Of a DNA stretch of 64,000 nucleotides, positions 16,213-55,780 are shown piece after piece. The position numbers and the translations under genes were made by a program. The notes under the pieces were generated by a model. It searched no databases. It saw nothing but the letters and a program-made list of their open reading frames with translations, and was not told where the DNA came from. The first letter of the stretch is position 1. Every line of letters begins with the position of its first letter. The stretch covers positions 124,001-188,000 of IMG/VR virus record IMGVR_UViG_3300032285_004054; one strand, written 5' to 3'.

Positions 16213-16231
16213 ATATATTATTTAAACTACA

Positions 16232-16963: not shown

Positions 16964-16974
16964 GTTAATATATA

Positions 16975-17847
16975 TTATATTGTCGGGAAACTTGCAAATT
17001 GTTCGTCTCCGGTATCAGTTTGTTCTTCAGAGGGTGAACTCTCTTTTATACTAGCTTCAAGATTTTTAGCAAAAATTTTAAATTCACCTGGTGTACAGTT
17101 TTCTAAATACTCTAAAGAAATATTAGCGTATTTTGCTAGATAAAACATATCACTATAAAATACACTTAAATCATCTCCGAATAGAAGTTGTATTAAAAAA
17201 TACTGTTCATCTAATTTTATATCGTAAGGTATACAAAACTGCTCAACATTAGTCTTAAAAAAGAAAATATCTTTTAATATTTTAGCAATTTCTTTTTCGT
17301 AATTTCTAATATTTGTTAAAGCAGATGGTGTTAGTATTTTAACAATTTGTAAAATATCATCTGATGTGGTAAACACATTATCGTTAATAGTAATTTTTTT
17401 AATAAAAAATGTGTAACTAGATGTATCTTCAATTATTTTTTTATAGTTCGGCAAACCAACAGTCAAAGCAATACCACCGTCAAAAAATAATGTATCTTTA
17501 TTTGTTAATAGCTTAGATAAGCTTTCTAATGTATTATATAAATTAACAGACAAGTTTGTTTTTTTATCGCTATCTTTATTAGACATAATAAGTGGTAGAT
17601 AACCGCTTACATTGATAGCTCTTATATAGATTAAAAGAATAAAATACTCTACAAAATTTAAGTTATTAACTTCATCTAAGGTAAGATTAGTAATCTTACT
17701 AATAACGTTATTTAAATTATTTAAAACTTCTAAATCAAATGTATCACTAAGTAATGCTTTAAGAATTACTTTATAAAGTCTAACAGGTAATTCATAGCAG
17801 TATATATCCTTTTCTATAAAAGGAACTTTACTGATATATTTTTCCAT
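16975..17847 (-). CDS. Baseplate hub assembly protein (gp26-like with gp51-like C-terminus)
   Basis: FVEYFILLIYIRAINV (gp26-like) plus C-terminal LAKYANISLEYLENCTPGEFKIFAKNL (gp51-like). Confidence 0.6.
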   Translation of the reverse strand: MEKYISKVPFIEKDIYCYELPVRLYKVILKALLSDTFDLEVLNNLNNVISKITNLTLDEVNNLNFVEYFILLIYIRAINVSGYLPLIMSNKDSDKKTNLSVNLYNTLESLSKLLTNKDTLFFDGGIALTVGLPNYKKIIEDTSSYTFFIKKITINDNVFTTSDDILQIVKILTPSALTNIRNYEKEIAKILKDIFFFKTNVEQFCIPYDIKLDEQYFLIQLLFGDDLSVFYSDMFYLAKYANISLEYLENCTPGEFKIFAKNLEASIKESSPSEEQTDTGDEQFASFPTI

Positions 17848-17863
17848 TTTCTATTTATTAGAA

Positions 17864-19519
17864 CTACTTTGAAGATGCTAGAAAAGCGTTCTTACTCGAA
17901 TCAATTGTGTAGTAATAATATGTAAATGTAGCATTCTTTCTTATAGCTTGAGTATAAGGAGCGTATGTAAACTCGTGACCATCAACAGAAACAGGACAAG
18001 CACCGTAAAATGTTATTGTTTCTAAAATAGTAGGAGGGTTATCTTTTGTTGTGATACCTAATTTATAAAGAACCATATTTGTTCTATACGTCTGTTCAGG
18101 TGGACGAGCAATTAACCCTAAATGGCTTGTCATTATTACCCAAGGTCTAATAACATTATCAACGAAATCGACATTTGTCTCAAGAAATGATACTGTTACT
18201 TGTTGAGGGTCATTTCTACCTAAACCAATGTAGCTACGTATTAAACCGTTTCTCTGTACACCTTCACCTTGAAGTGTCATACTTTCGTTAGGTAATAGTA
18301 TACTCTGGGCAAACATACAACAAACTTTATTATAGTTATCACTAGCAACTGTATCAAATGCTTTATCTATCTGCCAGTTATTGCTATTGGGTTCGTATTT
18401 ATTAACCTGTTTAATAACCGACGGAATACCGTTTATATAATATGAATTGGATTTACCGCTTGTATCGTCACTATTACCACTCCACACAAGTACCCATTGA
18501 GCTCCCTTAGGCAACGTACCTGCTGGAGAAGTTAATACATTTTGAAAAAACGTTGGTACTAAACCTTTATATGCTTCACTTGTATTACTCGTGTTAATTT
18601 TTTTATCACTAACTTGAGGTGTGTTGTTATCGGTTAGTTGTAATTGGTTATTGGGTTTGGCTGAAGACGTCTTTTTTTCAGTAAAACTAATATCTTTATT
18701 TTGAGTAGCGTCTGTAGGTGGTACATTAGTACCAGTTAAAGATATTTGTGAAGTAGGTATACTTGCAGTTGGTATTTCACCGTTAGTTACCGGTGTAATA
18801 TCATTTAATTTATTAGGCGGTATACTTGCAGATGTAATACCAGGTGGTACCGTTTCGGTGGCCGAGGCTGTAGAGGGTACAACGTTACCATGTAAAGGTG
18901 TACTATTATTAACAGGTCGTTTAGCCTCTAAATAGGTACTGGACTGAAAGGATGTTGTTGAGGTTGTAGCTGGAGCTAATTGTAAAGACTTTGTTACAAA
19001 AGAATCAGGAGTAACAGCACTTCCTCCAATTACAGGTGGTTTAGTGTCTATTAATGTCTGCTGTGCATTTTGAATAACTACCGGCGGAACAGGGGTAGTG
19101 GGTATATTACTTGTAAATAATATATCGTTAGGGGTTACCGGTATTAAATTTAACGCAATATTGTTTCTTGCGATTTCGTACGAATTAGGTAGCGGTAGGT
19201 TGGTAGTTTCTATTTTATCAGATAAATTACCTACCGGTGGTGTACCTACATACTGTAATGGTGTTTTTGAGTGCTGTACCCCTATTTCGTTAATAGCGGG
19301 GTTTAATATACTCGGCGGAGTAGACGTATAATACGCTGAAGATGTTCCCTGAATGTCAGGAGGGGTAACTTTCTGAACAGGTAGCGGTATACCGGTAATT
19401 AAAAGGTCTGGTACCACAACAGGTGGTACGTTAAACTCGTCTGTTACCGGTACGTCTTTCTTAGTCTGAGTACTAAGAAAGTTAGGATCAATAATATTGA
19501 TTGACGGATCTACTGACAT
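17864..19519 (-). CDS. Tail-tube-like protein (gp54/gp19-like domain) with long Pro/Thr/Ser-rich N-terminus
   Basis: C-terminal ~220 aa: FAQSILLPNES...QVTVSFLET...IRPWV...ITFYGACPVSVDGHEFTY; TATAAATA at 19532-19539. Confidence 0.6.
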   Translation of the reverse strand: MSVDPSINIIDPNFLSTQTKKDVPVTDEFNVPPVVVPDLLITGIPLPVQKVTPPDIQGTSSAYYTSTPPSILNPAINEIGVQHSKTPLQYVGTPPVGNLSDKIETTNLPLPNSYEIARNNIALNLIPVTPNDILFTSNIPTTPVPPVVIQNAQQTLIDTKPPVIGGSAVTPDSFVTKSLQLAPATTSTTSFQSSTYLEAKRPVNNSTPLHGNVVPSTASATETVPPGITSASIPPNKLNDITPVTNGEIPTASIPTSQISLTGTNVPPTDATQNKDISFTEKKTSSAKPNNQLQLTDNNTPQVSDKKINTSNTSEAYKGLVPTFFQNVLTSPAGTLPKGAQWVLVWSGNSDDTSGKSNSYYINGIPSVIKQVNKYEPNSNNWQIDKAFDTVASDNYNKVCCMFAQSILLPNESMTLQGEGVQRNGLIRSYIGLGRNDPQQVTVSFLETNVDFVDNVIRPWVIMTSHLGLIARPPEQTYRTNMVLYKLGITTKDNPPTILETITFYGACPVSVDGHEFTYAPYTQAIRKNATFTYYYYTIDSSKNAFLASSK

Positions 19520-26406: not shown

Positions 26407-26885
26407 TTTTCTTCTAGAAGTTTGACAATTTCTCTTAAAGAGAGATCAATTGAGTTTAATACTTTATCTAGACCTGTATCAATTCTAGTAATTTTTTCAC
26501 TATACTCTTCAAATGGTAAACTCATCTGAGGATCTGGAGGTATAGGCGGTAATACTTGTTGTACTGGTACGTAGTTTGGAATTTGTTGAGGTGTATTATT
26601 TACTTGAGCAGGTACTTGACCTGAAGAAAATATGTTTGAATGAGGCATTTCAATAGCCTGAGCTTCTCTCAAAGAGAGAGCTACTGCAGCTGCTACTTCC
26701 GGGGACGACGGTGTACCTACTACTGGTTTTGCAGAGTGCGACCCTCTAATAAAGCTTAGAGGGTCGATTTTATTCGCAGGTCCACCAGCTGGAAGAGATG
26801 TAGTATTTTCGTCTACTCTCTTAAGCTCAGAGCCAAATATCTTAGCAATAGTAGCTGTAGCTAATTGCTCGTCAAATGTGCTCAT
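26391..26885 (-). CDS. Hypothetical protein
   Basis: 164 aa, Pro/Gln-rich; translationally coupled to folE2. Confidence 0.7.
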   Translation of the reverse strand: MSTFDEQLATATIAKIFGSELKRVDENTTSLPAGGPANKIDPLSFIRGSHSAKPVVGTPSSPEVAAAVALSLREAQAIEMPHSNIFSSGQVPAQVNNTPQQIPNYVPVQQVLPPIPPDPQMSLPFEEYSEKITRIDTGLDKVLNSIDLSLREIVKLLEEKWPTT

Positions 26886-27718
26886 TACTTAAGTTCTCTT
26901 CCAGCGTTAATAACGGCTACTGCAACCGCAGTATGAATGGATTCGTAGTGATTAACAACTACTGAGTAGTCCTTAATACGGTTATCAAGCTCCTTATCGA
27001 GTTCTACGGCTACCTTACGTACCATATCCTCAACAAACACCGGATTCTCATACATGAGCTCGGTCTGATAAGCCTCATCAACTCGCTTAAGGGCGTTAAT
27101 AATAGGTGCTGAAGCACTCTTCTCAACAATATCAATAAGATCTTCAATCCACATGATACCCTTTGACTCGTCAATCTCAACTGTAACATCAGCTACAGAA
27201 CGTTGATTATGGGCGCCGTAATCAGAGATCTCCTTAGAGCAAGGACAGAGTGACGCGTACATTACATTAACAGTTAGGTACAGACGCTCCTTACCATCAA
27301 TAAGACGACCTTCCATATTACCGCGGTAGTCCATATGAGATTCAATACCAGAGACAGGAGCCTTACGCTTAAGGAAGTAATCAAACTTAATCTTGACGTA
27401 CGCATTATCTGACTTCAGACGAGACTTACACTCGTGAAGAAGATCCTTAATAACCTCGTGTACGTAATAACCGTCTTTCTGTAGTACCTCTTCAATAAGG
27501 ATACGATAACGGGACATATTAGTACCTTTATTCTCTGAAGTAAGATCAGTATACATACTGAACTTACCTGAACCTTCATTAACAGTACCGTCCTTTCTAA
27601 TAATCTTTACAGGCAACGTAGCGTCGCGTGTACCTACCTTAGGGATGTACTTGTTAGGGAACCCGTCCTTAGTATTCTGGATGTCGGGGATATCAGCGTT
27701 AGTTTTGATTCTAGGCAT
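26885..27718 (-). CDS. folE2: GTP cyclohydrolase I type IB
   Basis: DIQN...IPKVG, KGTNMSR, YFLKRKAPVSG, SLCPCSKEISDYGAHNQRS, KRVDE, YENPVFVEDMVR, ESIH. Confidence 0.93.
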   Translation of the reverse strand: MPRIKTNADIPDIQNTKDGFPNKYIPKVGTRDATLPVKIIRKDGTVNEGSGKFSMYTDLTSENKGTNMSRYRILIEEVLQKDGYYVHEVIKDLLHECKSRLKSDNAYVKIKFDYFLKRKAPVSGIESHMDYRGNMEGRLIDGKERLYLTVNVMYASLCPCSKEISDYGAHNQRSVADVTVEIDESKGIMWIEDLIDIVEKSASAPIINALKRVDEAYQTELMYENPVFVEDMVRKVAVELDKELDNRIKDYSVVVNHYESIHTAVAVAVINAGRELK

Positions 27719-32136: not shown

Positions 32137-32505
32137 TTAATCCTCGAATAGCTTTACTACCTGAGGTTCACCCTGAGCAGGCTGAGGTGCTGCAGGAAGA
32201 GCAGCAAAGATCTGCTTATACTGAGCATCAAGCTTAAAGTCAAAGGCAATATCCTCAGACTCCGTAATAAGATTACGCTGATACTTCCAGTATGTAGCTT
32301 CTGTCTTATCAGCCTGAAACTCTCTAAAGAAGAGAGGCAGAATCTGAAGAGCCAGCTGACCGGTTTGCTGATTAGGCATTACCTGTACTACTGCGGGATT
32401 CTTGACTGTAAGAACAGCATCGGTTGTTCTCTCATCAACGCGCTCTGCAATAACAGTGCGGCCAATTGTGTCAAGGAATGTGATTAGTTTTGTTGTTTCG
32501 CTCAT
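32137..32505 (-). CDS. Hypothetical protein, possible Sm-like beta fold
   Basis: ITFLDTIGRTVIAE...LTVKNPAVVQVMP...LALQILP beta-strand pattern. Confidence 0.55.
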   Translation of the reverse strand: MSETTKLITFLDTIGRTVIAERVDERTTDAVLTVKNPAVVQVMPNQQTGQLALQILPLFFREFQADKTEATYWKYQRNLITESEDIAFDFKLDAQYKQIFAALPAAPQPAQGEPQVVKLFED

Positions 32506-32540: not shown

Positions 32541-33470
32541 CTACTGCCCCATTGCTTTATTTGTGTATTTGTTCACGTTGAACAAAGCTTCGGGTAGTAG
32601 ATCGGCTCTAGAAGCTCTTGCAGGATTAATATCCAGTGAACCTCTACGGGAGTAAAGAAGAGTAACACAGCAATCAGTTACTTCAGGATGCTTCATAATA
32701 GTTGTAAATAGTTTCTCAGCACAAAACTCATGAAATTCATTAACTTCACGGAGAGATACAATCTGCTTAAAAAGAGACTCCGGATCAACTGCCATGCCGT
32801 CTTTTGTCTTAATAAGAATATATGCTGCACCTGTATCCTTCTGTTTAGTATGACGGCAACGTGAACGAAGAGCATTAGTAAACCAGCGACTTGTTACGGG
32901 CTGATTGTCTTCTGGATGCAACTTATAAAACTTAAGATGATCTACCTGAGAGGAATAGTCAGTTATTTCAATAGAATCTGCTTTACCGTAGAGTTCCCAA
33001 TAAAGATCGAGATATTCATCTTCGAACGCATTATACGAATTTACATCTGAACCTGACGGAAAGAAGCAAACATGTACAGGTGTCTGTAGAGCAGCTTCAA
33101 GATCTTTCTTAACTTGCTCTTCGTAGTTAACGATAGCTTCCTTAATAGAACTACCCATCTTACACATATCAAAAGAATTGAGATAGAGTTTAGCAGACTT
33201 TGACTCTACCATAAACTTTGACTCAGCAGGGTATGTATACTTTAACGTACCTGCTACAGGGTAGCCGTTATCGAGGAGAAATGTTGCTTCGTGGCAATGC
33301 CATGTATCAAAACCGACAAATTCATTGCCGGTAATACCGTGATCAGCTCTCGCTAATTCTCTTGGCATTGGATTAAGCAATGATGGATCAAATTGCTCGG
33401 TATAAATTGCGTACGAAGCTGAAGATCCAAGTGTCTTCGACGCAATATCAGTTAGGTTTGTTGTACTCAT
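32541..33470 (-). CDS. queF: NADPH-dependent preQ0 reductase, two-domain type
   Basis: QueF motif ESKSAKLYLNSF; catalytic C-x6-D (SRCRHTKQKD); EFHEFC; YSRRGSLDINP. Confidence 0.92.
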   Translation of the reverse strand: MSTTNLTDIASKTLGSSASYAIYTEQFDPSLLNPMPRELARADHGITGNEFVGFDTWHCHEATFLLDNGYPVAGTLKYTYPAESKFMVESKSAKLYLNSFDMCKMGSSIKEAIVNYEEQVKKDLEAALQTPVHVCFFPSGSDVNSYNAFEDEYLDLYWELYGKADSIEITDYSSQVDHLKFYKLHPEDNQPVTSRWFTNALRSRCRHTKQKDTGAAYILIKTKDGMAVDPESLFKQIVSLREVNEFHEFCAEKLFTTIMKHPEVTDCCVTLLYSRRGSLDINPARASRADLLPEALFNVNKYTNKAMGQ

Positions 33471-34027
33471 AATTCGTAAGGGTTGTTATATTCGTATTTT
33501 TGTGTTTCCCAGCGTTCAATAGAATTAAGCACTTGCATAACTCTATTTTCAACTGAACCTGAAATTCTAATAACAGGAACTTTATACGATTGTATAATAG
33601 CTTGAAACGATTGCACTACACATTCAAAGAAATCTCTATTAACAGTTCGTTGACCGTCTTCTACTAACGGCAATTCCGGTTCAACATAAAAAATAATATC
33701 ATATCTATCAATCATTGCATAAAACAATTCTCTAATAGCACTCAGCACTTTTAAGTCTTTAACCAAAGACATTGAGTATGCATAACCATCTAAAGCACAA
33801 CGATCGTAAATAATATTACCGTCTTCATTAAGACGCTGAAGATGTTTAGTCATAATAGCTAATTGAGTTACCTCATCACCATCCTCATTTATATTATAAC
33901 CTGCCTCCTGCATACCTCTTGTTAAAGAAGTTTTAAAAGAAAAATCATCTAATAAACCGCTATCTTGTAACGCATTTACAAGAGTAGTTTTACCTTGACT
34001 ATGAGCTCCTGAAATAGCTACCTTCAT
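33467..34027 (-). CDS. P-loop nucleotide kinase (AAA_28/dNMP-kinase-like)
   Basis: MKVAISGAHSQGKTTL, IYDRCALD, IIFYVEP; coupled to queF. Confidence 0.8.
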   Translation of the reverse strand: MKVAISGAHSQGKTTLVNALQDSGLLDDFSFKTSLTRGMQEAGYNINEDGDEVTQLAIMTKHLQRLNEDGNIIYDRCALDGYAYSMSLVKDLKVLSAIRELFYAMIDRYDIIFYVEPELPLVEDGQRTVNRDFFECVVQSFQAIIQSYKVPVIRISGSVENRVMQVLNSIERWETQKYEYNNPYEL

Positions 34028-34563
34028 GCTGAATATAATAACCTCTTATTCAAAAATGTAAACCATAAATTTGTAGCATCCTTATGAAGTTTTTCTAAAA
34101 CTTCAAACTCAAGTACCCCTTCTATAAGAATTGTACTATACTCTTCTATTTTACCGCCATCAAGTTCGGCAGTACAGCGATGAATTGTATTACCTGACCA
34201 TTTCTGAAGTTCTTGTACAGCTCTTTTTTGAGGGTCCTTGCCTTTAAGATGAGGATGAAGCAAGAGATTAGCAGGATGTAGATTATATATTTCATACTCT
34301 TCACATATTTCACCCGGTATAATCCTCAACCATCCGTGTAACGTAACGAATGCGTTTTTAGGTATATGATGTTTATACTCTTCTATAGAAGGCGATTTAC
34401 TAATTTGAAAAATTCTAGCTCCAAACTCGTTAATAAGTTTTTGATTAACGCCGTTTAAATCCTGTCTATTGGTTATAATAAGATCAGGTGTACGGTTAAG
34501 TTTCTTTGAAAGATTGTAAATCTCACTACCTGTTTGACTAAAAAAAGTTACCCAAGGTCTCAT
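34024..34563 (-). CDS. dpdN: PurN-like formyltransferase (DpdN-like)
   Basis: FFSQTGS start, TLHGWLRII, YNLHP, GKDPQ, GNTIH...ELDGGKI formyltransferase motifs; inside the deazaguanine operon. Confidence 0.8.
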   Translation of the reverse strand: MRPWVTFFSQTGSEIYNLSKKLNRTPDLIITNRQDLNGVNQKLINEFGARIFQISKSPSIEEYKHHIPKNAFVTLHGWLRIIPGEICEEYEIYNLHPANLLLHPHLKGKDPQKRAVQELQKWSGNTIHRCTAELDGGKIEEYSTILIEGVLEFEVLEKLHKDATNLWFTFLNKRLLYSA

Positions 34564-35414
34564 GATACGAACGTACAGAGCTTTTTAAATACGTGTGTGT
34601 TGTACAAAACATCAGTAATTTGTTCAGATGTTAATGTAGAGCTAATAAAATCAACAAGCTTTACTGACCATTTTTCATCTAATCCTCTAAGAAGACCGTA
34701 ACGCTTACCTAAGATAGCTGCAACAATTGGGTTCGATGTGTCAATTGTTTCAATACATTTAAGATTTTGAAATCCAAACTCCCAGGGTACACTACATCCT
34801 AGTAGATGATGAGGTTTATCATGATTAATAATGCCGTCTCTATACAACCTTTCAATAAGACATATACGACCTAAAGCATAATTTGACCATTTATTAAATT
34901 TAAAATCTTTTAAAACGTCAGGTATCATATCTCCCCAGTCAAGTTCCTTTTGAACGCTCGCAAGATCAGGCCATTCGTTAAGATAAAAACTATAATCGAA
35001 TGAAATAGCGATCTTATCTGCTATACTCGACATAAAACGATAACATTTTACAATCTCCTCATATGTCTTACCTTGAACAACACCTATTGTCTTACCTGGT
35101 AGTACAGAATATTTCTCAGTAAATTTTGCGTAGCTTTCGATTGTTTCTTCAGTATTTTCAAGTACATCTGGTACAATGTATTCAGTTGGTTTAAGACGAG
35201 ATACCCAATAAGCGAATTCGTCAGAATCATATGCTGTACCTAACTCAAAAATTGAGTTGTCAAGAAGAACATGTCTGCCTTCTTTAACTGAATCTTCAAA
35301 GAACTTATAATATTCAGGATGCTCTTTAAATAGATGTACAAGCGCATAATCATAATCATTATAAGATTTTGATACATCTAGGAAAGATATAGGTGTCTCG
35401 TGGCTAATTAACAT
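34560..35414 (-). CDS. dpdA: TGT-like 7-deazaguanine transglycosylase (DpdA3-like)
   Basis: TIM-barrel TGT-type motifs LLDNSIFELG, IVPDVL, IGVVQG, HHLLGC, IDTSNP; adjacent to formyltransferase and queF. Confidence 0.75.
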   Translation of the reverse strand: MLISHETPISFLDVSKSYNDYDYALVHLFKEHPEYYKFFEDSVKEGRHVLLDNSIFELGTAYDSDEFAYWVSRLKPTEYIVPDVLENTEETIESYAKFTEKYSVLPGKTIGVVQGKTYEEIVKCYRFMSSIADKIAISFDYSFYLNEWPDLASVQKELDWGDMIPDVLKDFKFNKWSNYALGRICLIERLYRDGIINHDKPHHLLGCSVPWEFGFQNLKCIETIDTSNPIVAAILGKRYGLLRGLDEKWSVKLVDFISSTLTSEQITDVLYNTHVFKKLCTFVS

Positions 35415-35432
35415 AAATATTGATCAATAATA

Positions 35433-35672
35433 ATGTCTAACGAAGAAGATATCCAGTATATAATTGTAAAAAAATTAGTCTACGTGATAAAAGTAGGGCC
35501 TATTTATTTTTGGGATACAGCTGCTACAAATAAAGCTGAATGTCTTAGAAAAGGTTTACAGTTTTTTAAAGTAGAAAGTGAACATCTTTTAAAAATTAAA
35601 GGTGCTGAATTAATACGTTTATTTACAAAAGAAATTATAGCTCAAGATAATAAATCAAATAAGTCTGTTTGA
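35433..35672 (+). CDS. Hypothetical protein (79 aa)
   Basis: Fills the gap between dpdA and polymerase on the opposite strand; 31-nt overlap with the polymerase 3' end. Confidence 0.4.
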   Translation: MSNEEDIQYIIVKKLVYVIKVGPIYFWDTAATNKAECLRKGLQFFKVESEHLLKIKGAELIRLFTKEIIAQDNKSNKSV

Positions 35673-38185
35673 ACCTCTTTACCTATTTGTGGTAGTCTCC
35701 AACCGATAGCTTCATAAACACTTTCAATAGGTGGTACTACAATCTTACTAAACATCTTATCGTAATCAATTTTAATTGAATTAAATTCCTCTGGATATTC
35801 ACTTGTAAATGCTATTGCATCTAACCCATACTTATTTTTAGAAGCGTAGAAGTATTTTATCTTTTGTCCTGATTTAATAGTCTCGTATTTGGTTTCGAGC
35901 TCTAACTCATTTAAAAGTAAATTATACGCAATAGATGCTTTTACGTGACAAGGAGTTGCTTTGTTAAATTTTGATAGAGATGCACCTTGTGAATACTTTT
36001 CGTATTCTTTTACAGATTTTCTAAAAGCAGCTTCTGCAACACTGAGTGTCTTAAACGTATCGTAAGCTTCTCTAAAAACTTCATTTGTCTTCTTAACATC
36101 TCTAGACAGGAAGGCTGTATTTACGGTTTTCTTAATTACCTCTTTTACTTTTTGAGGTGTTGTTGAGCGTGCAAGCTCAACACCTACATATTTAAATTTA
36201 CTAACAGGTACCCCTTCATCATCAAGAATATGTAAGATATATCGTTTCTTTTGTAAGAAAGCTCCTACGTCAGCAATGGCTTCTCTCTTGAATACAAATC
36301 TCGGATCTGCTGAATTTAATTCTTCTCTAGCCCAGTCAAGAATTTTTGTACCTAAATGCTTATCAATTGCGTTGATAATTGTATGAGATTGCTCAGTAAC
36401 AATATTATTGTCAGCAAGTTTGATATTAAGTTTATCAAGAATTGGCTGAATTGTAATGTATAACGAGTCAGTATCACCACTTAAGATTAATGAATTATCT
36501 GTTTTAAAAGTTTCTTTTGCAAATTCGTTAATAATATGTCCACCTGCTTTAGCTACAGCTTGACCTGTAAGTGTAATAGAGGATGCATTATCAATATCCA
36601 TGAAAGCAGAATGCTTATTTGCAAACGTACCATAGATAGAATTTAGAAGAATTTTTAACGTATACTGTAGGGTATCGAAGTATTGTATAGAGGATGTTGT
36701 TTCTTTATCTTGCTTCTTTGTTTTCTTAAGCTCAAGCATTCTCTTACGAGCATAAACTCGCTCATCATAAATACTATTAATCAAATTAGGACAAACACCT
36801 TTAAACTTTTGAGAATATAGTACACCAGCTTTTGAAAGTGATACGTTTTCTGCTTTTAAGAATTGCTTGAGTTTATCAACAGTGATAGTAAATGTACCAC
36901 CGTTGACAAGTTTAATTTGAACTTCTTTATCTACTTCAACATCTCCTGTTACTATTTTACCTAATTTAGTTTCAGGTGAAATGTTTAAAGTAATAATAGT
37001 GTTAGGGTATAGGGAGTTAACGTCAAAACTTACAATAGCTTCTTTGAGACCTCGTTCGGGATCTCTTACATAACCTCCTTCAAGAGCCTCTCTTTCAATT
37101 TCGTTTTTAAATGTAGGTATAATGTATCCTTGTTTTTGGGCTTGTAAAGTCATTGCACCTGTAACAATAGATACTTTACCGAGTGCGCGTTCAAAGTTTG
37201 TACATCCTTTGTATGCTAGTAGACGAATGATCTTAAGATAGTTAAGCTTATCTTCCATTTTACGTAGAAGATCGACGTCCTGAATATTGTAATCAACGAA
37301 GTTTTCCCAATCTGTTTCAGCTAATGTTGAAAGGTTTGTAGCGTTAATTGCAAGCTTACCTTCACCTAACTCGTATTCGGCAATATAATTCAACGAAAAC
37401 GACTCTCTATCTCCTTTAGAGTAAGTCTTATAAATTTCCATGTAGTCTAAACAGCTAATACCTGTAATGTACCAGCGACCTACATCTTTACCGAACTTAG
37501 CAAAATTAGAACGGTAATTAAGTTCTCTTACTGGTGATAATTGTTTAATAAACTCTTCACCTAAGAGGTTTTTTGCTCTATTAATAATATACGGCACGTC
37601 AAACTGCTCGGTATTCCATCCTGTTAGAATATCTGGTGGATCCTTTTTCCAAAAATTAACAAACCGTTCAAATAGTTCTTCCTCGTTACTACACTTATAA
37701 TATGTAACGTTATCTAGTTTAGGTGTATAGTCGTTCTTTAACCCCCAAGTGTGTATTTTACCTGTAATTGTATCAAGAATAGTAATGAGGGTAACAGGGT
37801 CTTTTGCTCGTTCGGGTATAGGAAATTCATTCGGTGAATACGTTTCAATATCGATAAAATAAACCTTAAGAGGAAACTTACTGAATTCCTCTTTATGTAC
37901 ATCCTCTTTGAAGGTTTCGATAAGAAACTGCTGATCTACAGGTAAATTACCAAAGAGTCTTGGGTTACCTGTATCTTGAACGAACTTATTACGTTCAAAA
38001 GAATTTCTAAATGAATGTCTTTTTAAAGGGGTTTTAAAAATAGAAACACCATCCTGAGCGCCTTCTTTTTCTGTATATAAGAACGGTATAAACGGTACTT
38101 CAGTATCTATACGCTGACCGTCTTCTGTCCAAGTTCTAAGATATACTAAACCGTCTTTAGGGTTATAAGATGCGTTTCTATACAC
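35642..38185 (-). CDS. gp43: Family B DNA polymerase
   Basis: Exonuclease DIET, WNTEQFD, YNIQDV; polymerase FDVNSLYP, KILLNSIYG, GDTDS, KKRY; GTG start. Confidence 0.97.
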   Translation of the reverse strand: MYRNASYNPKDGLVYLRTWTEDGQRIDTEVPFIPFLYTEKEGAQDGVSIFKTPLKRHSFRNSFERNKFVQDTGNPRLFGNLPVDQQFLIETFKEDVHKEEFSKFPLKVYFIDIETYSPNEFPIPERAKDPVTLITILDTITGKIHTWGLKNDYTPKLDNVTYYKCSNEEELFERFVNFWKKDPPDILTGWNTEQFDVPYIINRAKNLLGEEFIKQLSPVRELNYRSNFAKFGKDVGRWYITGISCLDYMEIYKTYSKGDRESFSLNYIAEYELGEGKLAINATNLSTLAETDWENFVDYNIQDVDLLRKMEDKLNYLKIIRLLAYKGCTNFERALGKVSIVTGAMTLQAQKQGYIIPTFKNEIEREALEGGYVRDPERGLKEAIVSFDVNSLYPNTIITLNISPETKLGKIVTGDVEVDKEVQIKLVNGGTFTITVDKLKQFLKAENVSLSKAGVLYSQKFKGVCPNLINSIYDERVYARKRMLELKKTKKQDKETTSSIQYFDTLQYTLKILLNSIYGTFANKHSAFMDIDNASSITLTGQAVAKAGGHIINEFAKETFKTDNSLILSGDTDSLYITIQPILDKLNIKLADNNIVTEQSHTIINAIDKHLGTKILDWAREELNSADPRFVFKREAIADVGAFLQKKRYILHILDDEGVPVSKFKYVGVELARSTTPQKVKEVIKKTVNTAFLSRDVKKTNEVFREAYDTFKTLSVAEAAFRKSVKEYEKYSQGASLSKFNKATPCHVKASIAYNLLLNELELETKYETIKSGQKIKYFYASKNKYGLDAIAFTSEYPEEFNSIKIDYDKMFSKIVVPPIESVYEAIGWRLPQIGKEVQTDLFDLLS

Positions 38186-38191
38186 ACGCTA

Positions 38192-38219
38192 ATAATAGAC
38201 CGGTTTTAATTTGTTTCAA
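38192..38219 (-). promoter_or_regulatory. Sigma70-like promoter of the DNA polymerase
   Basis: TTGAAA-16 nt-TATTAT-6 nt-GTG(38185). Confidence 0.68.
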
Positions 38220-39469
38220 GATAATTTTGGATTTGTCTCAAGAAGATATGTTCTTTCATTAGAACCAAACGGCGTAAAATATGCTTCGTGATGTTTTCCG
38301 AGATTCTTTTCATCTTCAAGCCAGTAGTTATCAGTAAACGCACGTGACTTCTTACAAAGATCAGCATAACGAGTTTGATCTTTAAGAGCATATTTAATTT
38401 GATCAATAAACTCATCACCTGTCTTATACTTTAAGAGAGCATCCTTATATGTTACCATATCTGGACAAACACAAGGTAGACCCATTGCTCCTGCTTCTAA
38501 TAATTTAATATTAGATTTAGCACGATTAAAATTATTATCTTGTAGGGCAGCGAATGTTAGCTGTGTACCTGACTCTGCCATAGAAGCCGGGAAGTCTGGT
38601 AACTGTACCCACTCCTTGTAAATAATTTCACCTGAATCAACAAACGGTTTTAACGGTAGGGGGTAGCAACCGTAAAACTGCCATTGATAATCCTTACGGG
38701 TCTTCATTACAGCATTAACTACATGTGCAAAATCGTCTGCTTGATTAACACGGTTAACTACGTCTACGTGTGTACCTGAAGCAAAAATTGAAATAACGGG
38801 TTTCTTTTTATTCTTTTCGTATCCTTTGATAAGCTTATCGAGGTTGTAATAGCGATCAAACCACCATTTCAATAGATAGTTCGGTATTACAGTCGTAGCT
38901 TTATTACCTGTTTTCTCAATAAAATAATCTCTCATGAAATCACATGTAACAGTAACCTCATCACACATGTTCATAATATCGAGAATAGATCCTCGAATCT
39001 CATCGCTCGTAAATGCATCTTTATTACGGTTGTAATCTGGAATATCTTCTCTAAAGACAATATCGTCGATTTCGTAAATAAGCTTAAAGCCGTTTTGCTT
39101 GGAAAGCTCTTTAAGAACTTTAACAAACTCTTTTTGAATTGGTGTTGCCTGGCGTTGAATTTTAACTGCCTGAATGCCCTGATAAAATCTAGGATCCAGA
39201 ACCATCGTTGTTAATTCTAACACAACAGCTTTATTATAGAGATTAAGCATGGAGTTAGGAGCCATACAACGATAAAAACTACAGCCACCGTAATCAGCTA
39301 AATAATTTACAGCTCTTGGTAGATTTGCCCCAGGTATTTCAGGTGGAGGTAATTCAAAAGAACCTCTTGTAGGTACAGCACAAAATGTTGAAGGCATACC
39401 TAAAGGTAGGCCAACAGGTGCACCTATTGTTGTGTCTAAGCTAGTTCGTACGAGATTATAGTTGCTCAT
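38216..39469 (-). CDS. GT-B fold glycosyltransferase
   Basis: GGCSFYRC, IYEIDD, DEVTVTCDF, VIPNY, NNFNRAKSNIKLLEAGAMGLPCVC acceptor/donor motifs. Confidence 0.8.
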   Translation of the reverse strand: MSNYNLVRTSLDTTIGAPVGLPLGMPSTFCAVPTRGSFELPPPEIPGANLPRAVNYLADYGGCSFYRCMAPNSMLNLYNKAVVLELTTMVLDPRFYQGIQAVKIQRQATPIQKEFVKVLKELSKQNGFKLIYEIDDIVFREDIPDYNRNKDAFTSDEIRGSILDIMNMCDEVTVTCDFMRDYFIEKTGNKATTVIPNYLLKWWFDRYYNLDKLIKGYEKNKKKPVISIFASGTHVDVVNRVNQADDFAHVVNAVMKTRKDYQWQFYGCYPLPLKPFVDSGEIIYKEWVQLPDFPASMAESGTQLTFAALQDNNFNRAKSNIKLLEAGAMGLPCVCPDMVTYKDALLKYKTGDEFIDQIKYALKDQTRYADLCKKSRAFTDNYWLEDEKNLGKHHEAYFTPFGSNERTYLLETNPKLS

Positions 39470-53613: not shown

Positions 53614-54132
53614 ATGTCTCAATACACATCTACTAAATTAATCGAGCTAGGCTCTTGTGCTTTTCGTCAATGGCGTGCTACCCACAGTCATTGCCAATAT
53701 ATTCACGGATATCGCTTAATGGCTAAGTTTTGGTTTGGTTGTGATTCTCTTGATGAGAAGAACTGGGCAGTTGACTTTGGAGGTCTTAAGGAGCTTAAGA
53801 AGATTCTTAACAATCAGTTTGACCACACCCTTTGTGTTGCTCAGGATGACCCTCTCCTAGAGGAGTTTAAGAAGCTAGATGATATTGGAGGTGTTCAACT
53901 CCGTATTATGGAATCAGTCGGTGTTGAAAAAACAGCCGAATGGTGCTTTAAAACAGCTAATGAGTTTGTAAAAAACCTAACACAGAATCGTTGCTGGGTA
54001 GAGAGTGTTGAAGTGTTCGAACACGAACAGAATTCTGCTATCTATTCTAAAGAAGATTTAACACTTAAAATAACACCTTCAGTAACTTCAACATCAAATA
54101 CATTTTATGCCTCAGACCGACCAGGAGTCTAA
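53614..54132 (+). CDS. queD: 6-carboxytetrahydropterin synthase
   Basis: HSHCQYIHGY, WAVDFGGLK, FDH, GVEK, VEVFE. Confidence 0.92.
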   Translation: MSQYTSTKLIELGSCAFRQWRATHSHCQYIHGYRLMAKFWFGCDSLDEKNWAVDFGGLKELKKILNNQFDHTLCVAQDDPLLEEFKKLDDIGGVQLRIMESVGVEKTAEWCFKTANEFVKNLTQNRCWVESVEVFEHEQNSAIYSKEDLTLKITPSVTSTSNTFYASDRPGV

Positions 54133-54323: not shown

Positions 54324-55154
54324 ATGGAAAATAATACATTAGAAATTTCAGAGCACTTCTACTCCGTACAATGTGAAGGTATCTCCACAGGTGTACCGGC
54401 GTATTTTATTCGTTTGAAAGGTTGTAATCTATCCTGTGGTTTTTCAGGTAAAGCTATTGTAGATCTTAAGCGTAATCTTGAAGAAGTTGAAGGTTATGTA
54501 GTAGGTGGTAATATAACTGGTGATTTACACAGTGAAGGTAAGGCAACATGGACATGTGATTCAGCACCTGTCTGGCTCAGAGGTGCTCATACTACATACG
54601 AGCAGCTAGTACAATCTTGGGTTGATCAAGGTATCCTAGATTGGATTCTAGATGGTACAATTCATCTTATCTGGACAGGAGGTGAACCTACAATACCTAA
54701 GCATCAAAAAGCAATTGTCGGTTTCTTGAAGTGGTTTGCTGACAAATATAAAACAGAAAAAGTTTATAGTGAGATTGAAACTAACGGTTCAATTGTTATT
54801 GAAGATAGTCTTCTTACTTGGCTAGATCAGATTAATTGCTCGGTTAAGCTTCATAATTCAGGCATGGATAAAGATAAGCGTATTAATGAACAGGCACTTC
54901 GCCGTATTAAGCTTCATCGCAATTATTCATTTAAGTTTGTAATCTCTGACGAGGAAGATTTAGTAGAAATTATTAGAGATTTTGTAGTACCTTTTGAAAT
55001 ACCTACTAACAGAATCTGTATGATGCCCGGACTAGATAGTCAAGAACATTACCATGAAAGGACACGTTTTGTTTTAGAGATGGCTAAGAAGTATGGTTTT
55101 AGAGGTTTATCACGTTTACATATTAGTGCTTGGGATCAAGCAACAGGTGTATGA
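54324..55154 (+). CDS. queE: 7-carboxy-7-deazaguanine synthase (radical SAM)
   Basis: EHFYSVQCEG..TGVPAYFIRLKGCNLSC...CDS, WTGGEP, IETNG, SVKL, FKFVI, RLHI. Confidence 0.92.
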   Translation: MENNTLEISEHFYSVQCEGISTGVPAYFIRLKGCNLSCGFSGKAIVDLKRNLEEVEGYVVGGNITGDLHSEGKATWTCDSAPVWLRGAHTTYEQLVQSWVDQGILDWILDGTIHLIWTGGEPTIPKHQKAIVGFLKWFADKYKTEKVYSEIETNGSIVIEDSLLTWLDQINCSVKLHNSGMDKDKRINEQALRRIKLHRNYSFKFVISDEEDLVEIIRDFVVPFEIPTNRICMMPGLDSQEHYHERTRFVLEMAKKYGFRGLSRLHISAWDQATGV

Positions 55155-55780
55155 AAATTGCTATAATAGGTACACATTGTAACGGTAAGACAACTCTTAT
55201 TGAGGAATTTCTAAAGCGCTGGCCAATGTATAAGAAGCCAGCGAAGACGTATAGAGATTTCTTAAATGATAAGAAAATAAAAATTAATCAAAAAGGCACT
55301 AAAGAGAGCCAGAGAGCGATACTTGATGCACTTATTGATGAAGTACAAACGGCTTGCGGATCAGGAGATGAGTTTCTTATCTTTGATCGTTGTGTATTAG
55401 ACAATCTTGTTTATTCACTTTGGCTTAATGCAAAAGGTAAAGTTGATGATAACTTTATTATGGATTGTAAGTTTCTAGTATCTGAAACAATTAAGCTTTT
55501 TGATATTATCTTTTACATACCTTTAAGAGAAGAAATTAAATTAGAGAAGAGAAAACATAGAGATATTGACCCTGTTTATCGAGAGGAAATTGATAATATA
55601 TTCTCAGCGGTTATTGGTACATATCTTACTGGGTCAGGTATTTTCTTTCCGTTAAGTGATTGCCCGGCTGTTATTGAAATTGAAGGTCCGCCGGATCTAA
55701 GATGCGATCAAATACAGCTCTATATTAAAGATACAGGAAAAACGTATACAGAGGAAGATCCATCGTTAATTTATACATAA
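55151..55780 (+). CDS. P-loop nucleotide kinase (AAA_28/dNMP-kinase-like)
   Basis: MKIAIIGTHCNGKTTL, FDRCVLD, IIFYIP; ATGA overlap with the queE stop (start moved from 55130). Confidence 0.8.
   Translation: MKIAIIGTHCNGKTTLIEEFLKRWPMYKKPAKTYRDFLNDKKIKINQKGTKESQRAILDALIDEVQTACGSGDEFLIFDRCVLDNLVYSLWLNAKGKVDDNFIMDCKFLVSETIKLFDIIFYIPLREEIKLEKRKHRDIDPVYREEIDNIFSAVIGTYLTGSGIFFPLSDCPAVIEIEGPPDLRCDQIQLYIKDTGKTYTEEDPSLIYT

What the first reader, a model, noticed from the sequence alone, without database searches (positions are those of the whole stretch)
32541..38185. dpdA3-like + formyltransferase + kinase + queF operon beside the DNA polymerase: candidate formyl-preQ1 genome
Seen: four overlapping (ATGA-coupled) genes, a TGT-like barrel, a PurN-like formyltransferase, a P-loop kinase and a reductase-type QueF (intact ESKSAK motif and Cys/Asp), immediately downstream of and co-oriented with gp43. 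Known: FolE-QueD-QueE-QueC-QueF makes preQ1, and DpdA-family enzymes place 7-deazaguanines in phage DNA. From memory, a DpdA3 plus PurN-paralog (DpdN) combination is linked to formylated dPreQ1 in a Flavobacterium phage. Inference: this phage replaces much or all of its G with an N-formyl-preQ1-type base to evade restriction and CRISPR. The dispersed layout in a T4-like backbone differs from compact dpd clusters.
Basis: partly seen in the sequence, partly recalled or inferred. Interest (0 to 1): 0.8.

Follow-up and report, generated by a model that had tools for sequence, protein, structure and literature searches.

The report
Phage operon replacing guanine in DNA
An uncultured, distantly T4-like phage carries beside its DNA polymerase gene the same gene set that, in one cultured Flavobacterium phage, accompanies complete replacement of guanine by formyl-preQ1; a kinase that always travels with it suggests the swap may be made on free nucleotides, not on finished DNA.

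Summary
On the minus strand, 227 bp downstream of a gp43-type polymerase, lie four genes joined by three ATGA overlaps. They encode a 284-aa TGT-fold barrel (DpdA3), a PurN-like formyltransferase (DpdN), a P-loop nucleoside/nucleotide kinase and a bimodular QueF. The proteins are 46, 41, 34 and 39% identical to their counterparts in Flavobacterium phage immuto_2-6A and lie in the same order. In that phage LC-MS showed 100% G replaced by formyl-dPreQ1. FolE2, QueD and QueE are in the window; QueC is elsewhere in the 218-kb genome. As filed, this is a new member of a known kind, on a new backbone (polymerase at most 34% identical to any isolate's).

The kinase is the added value. It accompanies DpdA3 in 70 of 70 informative metagenomic loci, in immuto and in Campylobacter phage CP220, and is kept where DpdN and QueF are lost. 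A second paralog is ATGA-coupled to QueE. Its fold is that of deoxynucleoside, thymidylate and NadR riboside kinases. The defining paper never mentions it and could not get DpdA3 to modify DNA in E. coli. I slightly favour base exchange on nucleosides or nucleotides before replication (0.45) over the published post-replicative model (0.40).

The parts
35642..38185 (-). Family B DNA polymerase, gp43-like, upstream of and co-oriented with the module
   Evidence: PF00136 6.9e-31 and PF03104 7.5e-22. The best isolate hits are Phage C48C1, Pelagibacter phage HTVC008M and T4-like cyanophages at only 31-34% identity.
35415..35641 (-). 227-bp AT-rich gap between the polymerase gene and the DpdA3 gene; possible operon promoter region
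   Evidence: There are several sigma-70-like matches, no terminator-like site, and no enrichment I would rely on.
34560..35414 (-). DpdA3-family TGT-fold barrel (284 aa), the predicted guanine / 7-deazaguanine exchange enzyme
   Evidence: PHROG 19058 at 5.6e-56. 45.7% identity to immuto DpdA3 and about 44% to CP220 gp056. AlphaFold model pLDDT 92.9. TGT/DpdA fold. D52, F56, D83, L205 and D225 are invariant in the family.
34024..34563 (-). DpdN-type formyltransferase (179 aa)
   Evidence: PF00551. 41.4% identity to immuto DpdN, the only phage-isolate hit. N94/H96/D135 align to E. coli PurN N106/H108/D144, and the SxxGS loop is conserved. Natural in-frame DpdA3-DpdN fusions exist.
33467..34027 (-). 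Kin1: AAA_28 P-loop nucleoside/nucleotide kinase (186 aa), the invariable partner of DpdA3
   Evidence: PF13521 at 1.2e-15. PHROG 2107 'thymidylate kinase'. Profile against PDB sequences: deoxynucleoside kinase 2.7e-8, TMPK 1.7e-6, NadR, dGK. Model pLDDT 90.6 with top folds dAK, NadR riboside kinase and TMPK. Present in 70 of 70 informative loci.
32541..33470 (-). Bimodular QueF (309 aa), preQ0 to preQ1 reductase
   Evidence: QueF_N and QueF domains, TIGR03138 at 2.7e-51. QueF motif and Cys/Asp present. 38.7% identity to immuto QueF.
26885..27718 (-). FolE2 (GTP cyclohydrolase IB), first step of 7-deazaguanine synthesis, next to gp32
   Evidence: PF02649 at 2.1e-72; NF010200 at 236 bits, above its cut-off of 215.
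53614..54132 (+). QueD (6-carboxytetrahydropterin synthase)
   Evidence: PF01242 at 1.3e-16. 42.5% identity to immuto QueD.
54324..55154 (+). QueE-like radical-SAM CDG synthase (divergent)
   Evidence: Partial hits to five QueE NCBIfam models, all below cut-off. 24.7% identity to immuto QueE. Three Cys are conserved with the QueE of immuto and phiST.
55151..55780 (+). Kin2: second AAA_28 kinase paralog, ATGA-coupled to QueE
   Evidence: PF13521 at 7.7e-12. PHROG 2107. Its ATG at 55151 overlaps the QueE TGA at 55152-55154. The QueD-QueE-Kin2 order is kept in the closest relatives.

Best explanation
Layer 1, what it is (my confidence about 0.85). This is a translationally coupled DNA-hypermodification operon, DpdA3-DpdN-kinase-QueF. 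Together with FolE2, QueD, QueE and QueC encoded elsewhere in the genome, it turns GTP into preQ1, puts that 7-deazaguanine in place of guanine, and formylates its aminomethyl group. The expected result is virion DNA carrying formyl-dPreQ1 instead of most or all dG, as measured in Flavobacterium phage immuto_2-6A.

Layer 2, how (favoured at about 0.45 against 0.40 for the published model). The exchange is made on a free deoxyguanosine nucleoside or nucleotide, not on finished DNA. In this model DpdA3, a minimal TGT barrel, swaps guanine for preQ1 on the monomer. DpdN, a PurN relative whose parent enzyme formylates a primary amine on a ribose-5-phosphate scaffold, formylates the product. Kin1, with Kin2 and host NDP kinase, raises it to the triphosphate. 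The adjacent gp43-type polymerase then incorporates it. A phage HGPRT returns the released guanine to GMP and GTP, the precursor of the next preQ1.

Shown here: gene content, order, coupling, folds, conserved residues and the co-occurrence statistics. Inferred: every enzymatic step, the substrate of DpdA3, and the final base.
For: Layer 1.
- Orthology and identical gene order with immuto, where LC-MS found fdPreQ1 and no dG (PMC10516641).
- Complete pathway present.
- TGT/DpdA fold.
- DpdN keeps the Asn-His-Asp triad.
- QueF motifs present.
- Natural DpdA3-DpdN fusion proteins P0274 and P0301.

Layer 2.
1. Kin1 accompanies DpdA3 in 70 of 70 IMG/VR loci with at least 1.3 kb downstream, across three DpdA3 clades and at least two backbones. 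It is kept where DpdN and/or QueF are lost. It is also adjacent in immuto (gp68) and CP220 (gp057).
2. The kinase belongs by sequence profile and by fold to the deoxynucleoside, thymidylate and NadR riboside kinases, which are small-molecule kinases.
3. Divergent DpdA3 genes have recruited other P-loop kinases at the same position: phiST CGPG_00066 (AAA_18, 9.4e-7) and, weakly, BSTP12_039.
4. An ESM-Atlas cluster of 455-aa viral proteins, 93% of them carrying AAA_28, aligns with the DpdA3 model over 238 residues (TM 0.72-0.73). This is a probable DpdA3-kinase fusion.
5. Kin2 is ATGA-coupled to QueE.
6. In all three isolates with proven 100% replacement, an NTP pyrophosphatase or HD phosphohydrolase lies beside or two genes from DpdA3: immuto gp63 (PRA-PH), phiST 00068 (MazG), CP220 gp055 (HD+AAA_33).
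7. DpdA3 expressed in E. coli gave no DNA modification. ADG nucleoside was seen in the cytoplasm of CP220-infected cells (PMC10516641).
8. DpdN keeps the N-terminal SxxGS loop, which in PurN binds the substrate 5'-phosphate by my own knowledge.
9. DpdA3 is 284 aa against 360-413 for TGT and DpdA, with only one invariant Cys, so the Zn subdomain is absent.
Against: - No chemistry exists for this uncultured phage.
- Every characterised member of the TGT superfamily acts on a polynucleotide, and bacterial DpdA is a proven DNA enzyme (PMC10164549).
- A pool route to complete replacement needs dGTP to be excluded. I found no MazG, MazG-like, PRA-PH, dUTPase_2 or HD protein in this genome.
- The kinase could instead serve guanine-nucleotide supply or salvage, for example GMP to GDP after HGPRT. 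That would also explain its linkage to the pathway.
- In four loci the DpdN-kinase-QueF block lies 6.5-7 kb from DpdA3, so the kinase is tied to the module rather than strictly to DpdA3.
- The Atlas fusion is a structural lead; I could not retrieve a sequence for it.
- The 80 loci include near-duplicates and are not independent.
- A class-II GATase-like ORF next to QueC leaves room for a different end product.
Confidence: 0.45

Rival explanations
1. Published model. The module and end product (fdPreQ1) are the same, but DpdA3 is a DNA transglycosylase that exchanges guanine for preQ1 (or formyl-preQ1) in DNA after, or coupled to, replication. The kinases only support guanine-nucleotide supply. 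One version: HGPRT recycles the released guanine to GMP, and Kin1/Kin2 act as GMP or dNMP kinases that feed GTP to FolE2 and dNTPs to replication. Another version: the kinase acts as an ATP-using helper, as DpdB does for bacterial DpdA.
For: DpdA3 has the TGT/DpdA fold. Its invariant D52, F56, D83, L205 and D225 have the same spacing as Asp95, Phe99, Asp130, Leu236 and Asp256 of the proven DNA enzyme DpdA. [quoted passage not shown] No dGTP-clearing enzyme was found in this genome. An HGPRT is encoded. Bacterial DpdA needs an ATPase partner. CP220's second kinase paralog sits beside a dUTPase in a general nucleotide-metabolism context.
Against: No DpdA3 has ever been shown to act on DNA, and heterologous expression failed. 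A supply kinase need not be welded to DpdA3 or DpdN by overlapping codons in 70 of 70 loci, nor be kept where QueF and DpdN are lost. DpdB is ParB-like, not a nucleoside-kinase fold; Kin1 is a 186-aa acidic protein (pI 4.7) with dNK/TMPK/NadR-type motifs and no extra domain. A probable DpdA3-AAA_28 fusion exists. An NTP pyrophosphatase or HD protein lies beside or near DpdA3 in the three isolates.
Confidence: 0.4
2. The module is a 7-deazaguanine system, but the final base is not fdPreQ1, or replacement is only partial. Candidates are plain dPreQ1 with DpdN formylating something else, or dG+ or dADG made through the GATase-like protein beside QueC.
For: DpdN's activity is only predicted, even in immuto. 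A 213-aa class-II GATase-like ORF overlaps the end of QueC. It has homologs in 9g-like, Vibrio and Pseudomonas phages, and none was listed from immuto. All proteins are only 25-46% identical to their immuto counterparts. A nested T4-like sublineage has dropped DpdN and QueF, which shows the end product varies within this clade.
Against: QueF and DpdN are intact, keep their catalytic residues and are ATGA-coupled to DpdA3. DpdA3-DpdN fusions show the two work together. Every DpdA3 phage analysed so far showed complete replacement.
Confidence: 0.1
3. The genes are an auxiliary metabolic set that boosts host queuosine/tRNA modification or folate-purine metabolism. In this reading DNA is not modified.
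For: [quoted passage not shown] PF00551 enzymes include PurN and Fmt.
Against: The barrel is not a tRNA-TGT; it lacks the Zn and tRNA-binding parts and clusters with DpdA3 of phages whose DNA is fully modified. DpdN matches cellular formyltransferases only weakly: PurN (TIGR00639) at 37.5 bits against a cut-off of 150. The module lies in the replication gene block between gp43 and UvsX.
Confidence: 0.03

Closest known systems
[quoted passage not shown]
   Same: The same four proteins occur in the same order, DpdA3-DpdN-AAA_28 kinase-QueF, at 46, 41, 34 and 39% identity. The full preQ1 pathway is present.
   Different: The backbone is T4-like with a family B polymerase, against family A in immuto. 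The cyclohydrolase is FolE2 rather than FolE type I. The pathway genes are scattered over more than 120 kb. There is no PRA-PH/MazG gene beside DpdA3. A second kinase is coupled to QueE. A GATase-like ORF lies beside QueC. The DpdA3 falls in a separate, well-supported T4-like clade (96/98).
dADG system of Campylobacter Firehammervirus CP220 (DpdA3, 100% dG replacement)
   Same: The DpdA3 is 43.7% identical, with an orthologous AAA_28 kinase directly downstream (31%). There is a second paralogous kinase, and the phage is a T4-related myovirus.
   Different: CP220 has no QueF or DpdN next to its DpdA3, its pathway stops at CDG and it ends in the amide, dADG (PMC10516641). It has an HD+AAA_33 protein upstream of DpdA3, which this genome lacks.
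Bacterial Dpd system: DpdA DNA-guanine transglycosylase with the DpdB ATPase (PMC10164549)
   Same: The TIM-barrel TGT fold is shared (Z 17.4 to 7ui4). Three invariant Asp, a Phe and a Leu have matching spacing. There is an ATP-using partner gene.
   Different: DpdA has 413 residues in the crystal entry, modifies fewer than 0.1% of G at specific sites, and inserts preQ0. Its partner is ParB-like, not a nucleoside-kinase fold. DpdA3 is 284 aa with no Zn subdomain, and no DNA activity has been shown for it.
Pre-replicative base replacement pathways: T4 hmC (gp56 dCTPase, gp42 dCMP hydroxymethylase, gp1 dNMP kinase) and S-2L/phiVC8 Z-genome (MazZ, PurZ, DatZ). This comparison rests on my own knowledge.
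   Same: This is a working analogy only. A base-changing enzyme plus a dedicated kinase sits in the replication block of a T4-like genome and is associated with 100% replacement. In T4, by my knowledge, genes 42 and beta-gt occupy the gp43-uvsX interval that the module occupies here.
   Different: There is no homology. The dNTP-clearing member of the triad was not found in this genome. Action of DpdA3 on monomers is not demonstrated.

Membership tests
DpdA3 subfamily of TGT/DpdA transglycosylases (Cui et al. 2023) | Sequence homology to the reference DpdA3 proteins (immuto gp65, CP220 gp056, phiST CGPG_00065) | tested here: met
   45.7% identity (2e-64), 43.7% (1e-50) and 27% over the N-terminal half (5e-4). 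Profile A2 scores them at 5e-99, 2e-77 and 6e-15. There is a single copy in the genome.
DpdA3 subfamily of TGT/DpdA transglycosylases (Cui et al. 2023) | TGT-type (beta/alpha)8 barrel fold | tested here: met
   Model pLDDT 92.9. Foldseek top hits are all TGTs, at E 1e-7 and probability 1.00. VIA Z is 17.8, 17.4 and 17.3 to ArcTGT, DpdA and TGT, with about 230 residues aligned at about 3 A.
DpdA3 subfamily of TGT/DpdA transglycosylases (Cui et al. 2023) | The three active-site aspartates invariant in TGT and DpdA (general acid/base, base recognition, nucleophile) | tested here: inconclusive
   D52, D83 and D225 (with F56 and L205) are invariant in 23 family members. They sit at the C-terminal ends of barrel strands and have the spacing of DpdA Asp95/Phe99/Asp130/Leu236/Asp256. 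I had no residue-level structural alignment, and hhalign against E. coli Tgt was not significant.
DpdA3 subfamily of TGT/DpdA transglycosylases (Cui et al. 2023) | Co-encoded with 7-deazaguanine synthesis genes | tested here: met
   FolE2, QueD, QueE, QueC and QueF are all present.
DpdA3 subfamily of TGT/DpdA transglycosylases (Cui et al. 2023) | Complete replacement of dG in virion DNA | not testable with these tools
   The phage is uncultured. The only run holding it is kept as assembled contigs of what may be the source metagenome.
DpdA3 subfamily of TGT/DpdA transglycosylases (Cui et al. 2023) | Guanine exchange activity on DNA | not testable with these tools
   This has never been shown for any DpdA3; expression in E. 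coli was unsuccessful (PMC10516641).
DpdN (predicted dPreQ1 formyltransferase) | PF00551 formyltransferase with the catalytic Asn-His-Asp of PurN | tested here: met
   PF00551 at 39.6 bits, above the cut-off of 26.1. N94/H96/D135 are invariant and align to E. coli PurN N106/H108/D144 (the numbering of the PurN triad is from my own knowledge).
DpdN (predicted dPreQ1 formyltransferase) | Groups with immuto DpdN rather than with other phage or cellular formyltransferases | tested here: met
   Only the four immuto records match among 50,697 phage records at E<=1e-3 (41.4% identity). The match to PurN (TIGR00639) is 37.5 bits against a cut-off of 150. I did not build a tree against groups 2 and 3 of the paper.
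DpdN (predicted dPreQ1 formyltransferase) | Co-encoded with DpdA and the whole FolE-to-QueF pathway | tested here: met
   In addition, in-frame DpdA3-DpdN fusion proteins exist.
DpdN (predicted dPreQ1 formyltransferase) | Formylation of preQ1, dPreQ1 or its nucleotide | not testable with these tools
   This is predicted only, in the literature as well.
NADPH-dependent preQ0 reductase QueF, bimodular type | QueF_N and QueF domains, the QueF motif E(S/L)K(S/A)hK(L/Y)(Y/F/W), and the catalytic Cys with Asp seven residues on | tested here: met
   TIGR03138 scores 174.8 bits, below the equivalog cut-off of 293, as expected for a diverged phage copy.
Pre-replicative nucleotide-pool replacement (T4 / S-2L paradigm) | A dedicated kinase of the nucleoside/NMP-kinase type linked to the base-changing enzyme | tested here: met
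Pre-replicative nucleotide-pool replacement (T4 / S-2L paradigm) | An enzyme that removes the canonical dNTP (here dGTP) from the pool | tested here: not met
   No MazG, MazG-like, PRA-PH, dUTPase_2 or HD domain was found in the 218-kb genome. Such genes are present in immuto, phiST and CP220. An unrecognised family cannot be excluded, because many ORFs have no match.
Pre-replicative nucleotide-pool replacement (T4 / S-2L paradigm) | The base-changing enzyme acts on a mononucleotide or nucleoside | not testable with these tools
   This needs enzymology.

The most novel reading that the evidence does not exclude
DpdA3 is not a DNA transglycosylase. It is a stripped-down TGT barrel that exchanges guanine for a 7-deazaguanine on a free deoxynucleoside or deoxynucleotide. 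Its obligate AAA_28 kinase partner or partners then build the modified dNTP, and the phage polymerase writes it into DNA. This would be the first pre-replicative 7-deazapurine pathway and the first TGT-fold enzyme working on monomers. It would explain why only DpdA3 phages reach 100% replacement and why DpdA3 alone is inactive in E. coli.
Probability: 0.45. Interest if true: 0.85.

Novelty: new member of a known kind. Interest (0 to 1): 0.55.

Why it matters
As filed, the finding extends a DNA hypermodification known from a single cultured phage to a large, uncultured and deeply branching T4-like lineage. The family behind it is very abundant: 4,054 DpdA3-like and 1,816 DpdN-like protein clusters were found at 90% identity. 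Fully G-substituted DNA resists most restriction enzymes, so it affects how such phages are sequenced, cloned and counted in metagenomes.

The larger point is mechanistic. How DpdA3 phages replace every guanine is unresolved, because no DpdA3 has been reconstituted. The invariable kinase partner, overlooked so far, turns the question into a simple experiment: which substrate does DpdA3 use, DNA or a monomer? If it is a monomer, these few genes would be an enzymatic route to 7-substituted 7-deaza-dGTPs, compounds now made chemically for sequencing and labelling.

Tried and rejected
- Pfam, NCBIfam, a PDB sequence search and hhalign against E. coli Tgt gave nothing significant for the barrel. 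Only the structure and phage homologs place it.
- I computed isoelectric points as a proxy for DNA binding. The DpdA3 family is acidic (median 5.4), but so is E. coli Tgt (5.97), so this is uninformative.
- I looked for base-modification signal in reads. The only run is stored as assembled contigs of what may be the source metagenome.
- I searched the genome for a dGTP-clearing enzyme with five Pfam families and with the immuto, phiST and CP220 proteins as queries. All were negative.
- I tried to retrieve a DpdA3-AAA_28 fusion sequence. The best 150 representatives contain DpdA3-DpdN fusions and other extended forms but no kinase fusion. Scans with the phiST and BSTP12 barrels gave 4 and 0 loci. 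The fusion therefore rests on the Atlas structural match alone.
- The promoter and terminator scan of the operon showed nothing above background worth using.
- The 122-aa ORF after QueF (32137-32505) is an Sm-like/DUF6561-type protein. It is kept between the module and uvsX in the T4-like loci, including those that lack QueF and DpdN, so I do not count it as part of the module.
- Crippen et al. 2019 (PMC6854489) is not held, so I used only what PMC10516641 says about it.
- megablast of the region against phage isolates found no match.

Full report
**1. The observation**

The window is bases 124001-188000 of a 218,400-bp virus record that CheckV rates complete. On the minus strand lie five ORFs:
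- an 847-aa family B polymerase at 35642-38185 (PF00136, PF03104);
- a 284-aa ORF at 34560-35414;
- a 179-aa formyltransferase at 34024-34563 (PF00551);
- a 186-aa AAA_28 P-loop protein at 33467-34027;
- a 309-aa bimodular QueF at 32541-33470 (QueF_N and QueF; TIGR03138 at 2.7e-51).

A 227-bp gap separates the polymerase gene from the 284-aa ORF. The three junctions of the last four genes each read ATGA. QueF carries VESKSAKLY and the Cys...Asp pair. The neighbours are T4-type replication genes: gp32, a DnaB/gp41-like helicase, UvsX/RecA, a gp46-like SbcC and a T4-type terminase. The polymerase is only 31-34% identical to any isolate's. The best matches are Phage C48C1, Pelagibacter phage HTVC008M and T4-like cyanophages. 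This is therefore a deep, uncultured T4-like lineage.

**2. The barrel protein**

It has no Pfam or NCBIfam hit but matches PHROG 19058 at 5.6e-56. Among 50,697 phage records it finds three groups:
- the annotated DNA guanine transglycosylase (DpdA3) of the Flavobacterium immuto phages (45.7% identity, 2e-64);
- the CP220-group Campylobacter phages (43-46%);
- more weakly, Cellulophaga phiST and some Bacillus phages.

An AlphaFold model built on 23 homologs has pLDDT 92.9. Foldseek returns only tRNA-guanine transglycosylases at the top (E 1e-7). A second aligner gives Z 17.8 to archaeosine TGT, 17.4 to the bacterial DNA enzyme DpdA (7ui4) and 17.3 to Z. mobilis TGT, with about 230 residues aligned.

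The family keeps D52, F56, D83, L205 and D225 invariant. These residues sit at strand ends. Their spacing matches the catalytic Asp95, Phe99, Asp130, Leu236 and Asp256 of DpdA. That equivalence is inferred from spacing, not from a residue-level superposition. The protein is about 100 residues shorter than TGT or DpdA and has one invariant cysteine, so the Zn subdomain is absent.

**3. The formyltransferase**

It hits only immuto's DpdN among phage isolates (41.4% identity). N94/H96/D135 align to PurN N106/H108/D144. It also keeps the N-terminal SxxGS loop.

**4. The rest of the pathway**

- FolE2 at 26885-27718 (PF02649 at 2e-72). No FolE type I is present.
- QueD at 53614-54132.
- A divergent QueE at 54324-55154, which shares its three cysteines with the QueE of immuto and phiST.
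- QueC at genome 30265-30909.

**5. Comparison with the known system**

In immuto_2-6A the order is DpdA3, a small ORF, DpdN, 'thymidylate kinase', QueF. This is the same order as here. LC-MS of that phage found fdPreQ1 and no dG, and DpdN was predicted from context (PMC10516641). On a DpdA3 tree the T4-like loci form their own supported clade (96/98), separate from the immuto clade. Rows left out of that tree were loci with less than 1.3 kb downstream, duplicates and partial hits.

**6. The kinase**

I fetched 80 IMG/VR loci with the DpdA3 profile and mapped the window's proteins onto them.
- All 70 loci with at least 1.3 kb downstream of DpdA3 carry the kinase.
- The median distance is 540 bp, which is the length of DpdN.
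- In four loci the DpdN-kinase-QueF block lies 6.5-7 kb away.

Three layouts occur:
- DpdA3-DpdN-Kin-QueF, in both T4-like and other backbones;
- DpdA3-Kin-QueF, a monophyletic group of 18 rows on the tree;
- DpdA3-Kin alone, in a nested T4-like subclade (L042, L056, L059).

So DpdN and QueF come and go while the kinase stays. CP220 has the ortholog directly downstream of its DpdA3, plus a second paralog next to a dUTPase. phiST has no ortholog. However, CGPG_00066, the gene abutting its DpdA3, is a P-loop kinase of another subfamily (AAA_18 at 9.4e-7), although the paper calls it a protein of unknown function. In Bacillus phage BSTP12 the ORF before the DpdA3-like gene matches the kinase profile weakly (2e-4).

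The kinase profile hits deoxynucleoside kinase, thymidylate kinase, NadR riboside kinase and deoxyguanosine kinase in the PDB. Its model (pLDDT 90.6) gives the same families by fold. Conserved motifs are listed.

In this genome a second paralog, Kin2, starts with an ATG that overlaps the QueE stop (ATGA at 55151-55154). The QueD-QueE-Kin2 order holds in the closest relatives. In several more distant ones QueC lies within about 3 kb.

The word 'kinase' does not occur in PMC10516641. [quoted passage not shown]

**7. Further links**

- Two representative proteins, P0274 and P0301 (447 aa), are in-frame DpdA3-DpdN fusions.
- An Atlas cluster of 455-aa viral proteins, 93% of them carrying AAA_28, matches the DpdA3 model over 238 residues (TM 0.72-0.73). 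This is a probable DpdA3-kinase fusion that I could not retrieve as sequence.
- Near DpdA3 in the three isolates with proven full replacement lie a PRA-PH-type NTP pyrophosphatase (immuto gp63), a MazG (phiST, two genes upstream) and an HD+AAA_33 protein (CP220 gp055).
- This genome has none of these families.
- It does encode an HGPRT (TIGR01203 at 167.7 bits, above the cut-off of 150). immuto has a small phosphoribosyltransferase beside QueE and FolE, with homologs in 11 of the 80 loci.

**8. Mechanism**

Identity of the module as an fdPreQ1-type G-replacement system: about 0.85.

For the step that matters, two models fit. The published one has DpdA3 exchanging bases in DNA. The alternative has it acting on a nucleoside or nucleotide, followed by formylation, phosphorylation and polymerase incorporation.

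For the alternative:
- the unbroken linkage to a small-molecule kinase, including non-orthologous replacement and a probable fusion;
- a second kinase coupled to QueE;
- the pyrophosphatase or HD neighbours in the isolates;
- the failure of DpdA3 alone in E. coli;
- the reported ADG nucleoside in infected cells;
- DpdN's descent from an enzyme that formylates an amine on a ribose-5-phosphate scaffold;
- from my own knowledge, every other fully replaced phage base is made at the nucleotide level, and family B polymerases accept 7-substituted 7-deaza-dGTPs.

Against it:
- no TGT-fold enzyme is known to act on monomers;
- no dGTP-clearing enzyme is found here;
- a supply or salvage role for the kinase (guanine to GMP by HGPRT, then to GDP) would also explain the linkage.

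This genome has 78,550 G:C pairs, so either route needs that many exchanges per genome copy. I put the monomer route at 0.45, the DNA route at 0.40, a different end product at 0.10 and a non-DNA role at 0.03.

**9. Verdict**

As filed, it is a new member of a known kind on a new backbone. The conserved kinase partnership is the part worth an experiment.

Noticed in passing
proteins P0274 and P0301 (metagenomic representatives): These are natural in-frame fusions of DpdA3 (residues 1-267) with DpdN (from about residue 272 to 447), 37-38% identical to the window's DpdN. The two enzymes evidently work together physically.
   Followed up: yes
ESM Atlas cluster, 455 aa, 110 members, all viral: The cluster carries Pfam AAA_28 in 93% of its members, and its model aligns with the DpdA3 barrel over 238 residues (TM 0.72-0.73). 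It is a probable DpdA3-kinase fusion. I could not obtain a sequence.
   Followed up: partly
proteins P0264 (419 aa), P0266 (586 aa), P0358 (344 aa), P0254 (475 aa): These are DpdA3 barrels with other appended parts. P0358 carries DUF3310 and P0254 carries a NUMOD3 motif. P0264 and P0266 have unassigned 160-320-aa extensions that look acyltransferase-like to my eye but gave no Pfam hit. They may mark further 7-deazaguanine derivatives.
   Followed up: partly
genome G000:C1:37138-37560 (-), outside the window (locus L093): A hypoxanthine-guanine phosphoribosyltransferase (TIGR01203 at 167.7 bits, above its cut-off) lies beside an HNH endonuclease and a dCMP-deaminase-like ORF. It could recycle the guanine released by base exchange into GTP for preQ1 synthesis.
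   Followed up: partly
genome G000:C1, locus L002 2184-2825 (+), overlapping the end of QueC: A 213-aa class-II glutamine amidotransferase-like ORF (GlmS N-terminus at 1.3e-6) has homologs annotated as amidotransferases in Vibrio and Pseudomonas phages and unnamed matches in 91 Escherichia phage records. It may supply ammonia to QueC or point to a dG+-type branch. A GT-2-like ORF follows it.
   Followed up: partly
window 38216-39469 (-): A 417-aa glycosyltransferase-like protein (PHROG 7162 at 3e-25) lies between gp46 and gp43. It is conserved at 61-80% identity in all T4-like DpdA3 loci, including those without DpdN and QueF. Its target is unknown. The genome has no thymidylate-synthase/dCMP-hydroxymethylase family gene.
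   Followed up: partly
loci L042, L056, L059 (IMG/VR): In this T4-like subclade the gp43-uvsX slot holds only DpdA3 and the kinase, with no DpdN or QueF. These phages should carry a different 7-deazaguanine.
   Followed up: partly
L085 (Cellulophaga phage phiST) 4499-4978, CGPG_00066: The gene abutting phiST's DpdA3, described in the literature as of unknown function, scores as a P-loop kinase (AAA_18 at 29.8 bits, above the cut-off of 29.4). One related IMG/VR locus, L094, keeps it.
   Followed up: partly
window 54324-55154 and loci L099-L109: The window's QueE is only about 27% identical to the QueE at the same position in relatives whose QueD and Kin2 are 53-72% identical. It also has a long insert between its second and third cluster cysteines. 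This looks like a QueE replacement or very fast divergence.
   Followed up: no
loci L005-L008 and L016, between PolB and DpdA3: Relatives have about 1.4-1.9 kb between the polymerase and DpdA3 genes, where this window has 227 bp. An extra gene, not examined, is inserted there.
   Followed up: no
window 14001-18000: Base composition is odd here: AT skew is -0.31 at 14-16 kb and G+C drops to 27% at 16-18 kb, against about 34% elsewhere. The window has no tRNA genes.
   Followed up: no
L091 (Bacillus phage BSTP12), L085 (phiST), L001 (immuto) and this window: The DpdA3-type gene lies next to, or within a few genes of, the DNA polymerase gene in four unrelated backbones, with both PolA and PolB polymerases.
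   Followed up: partly
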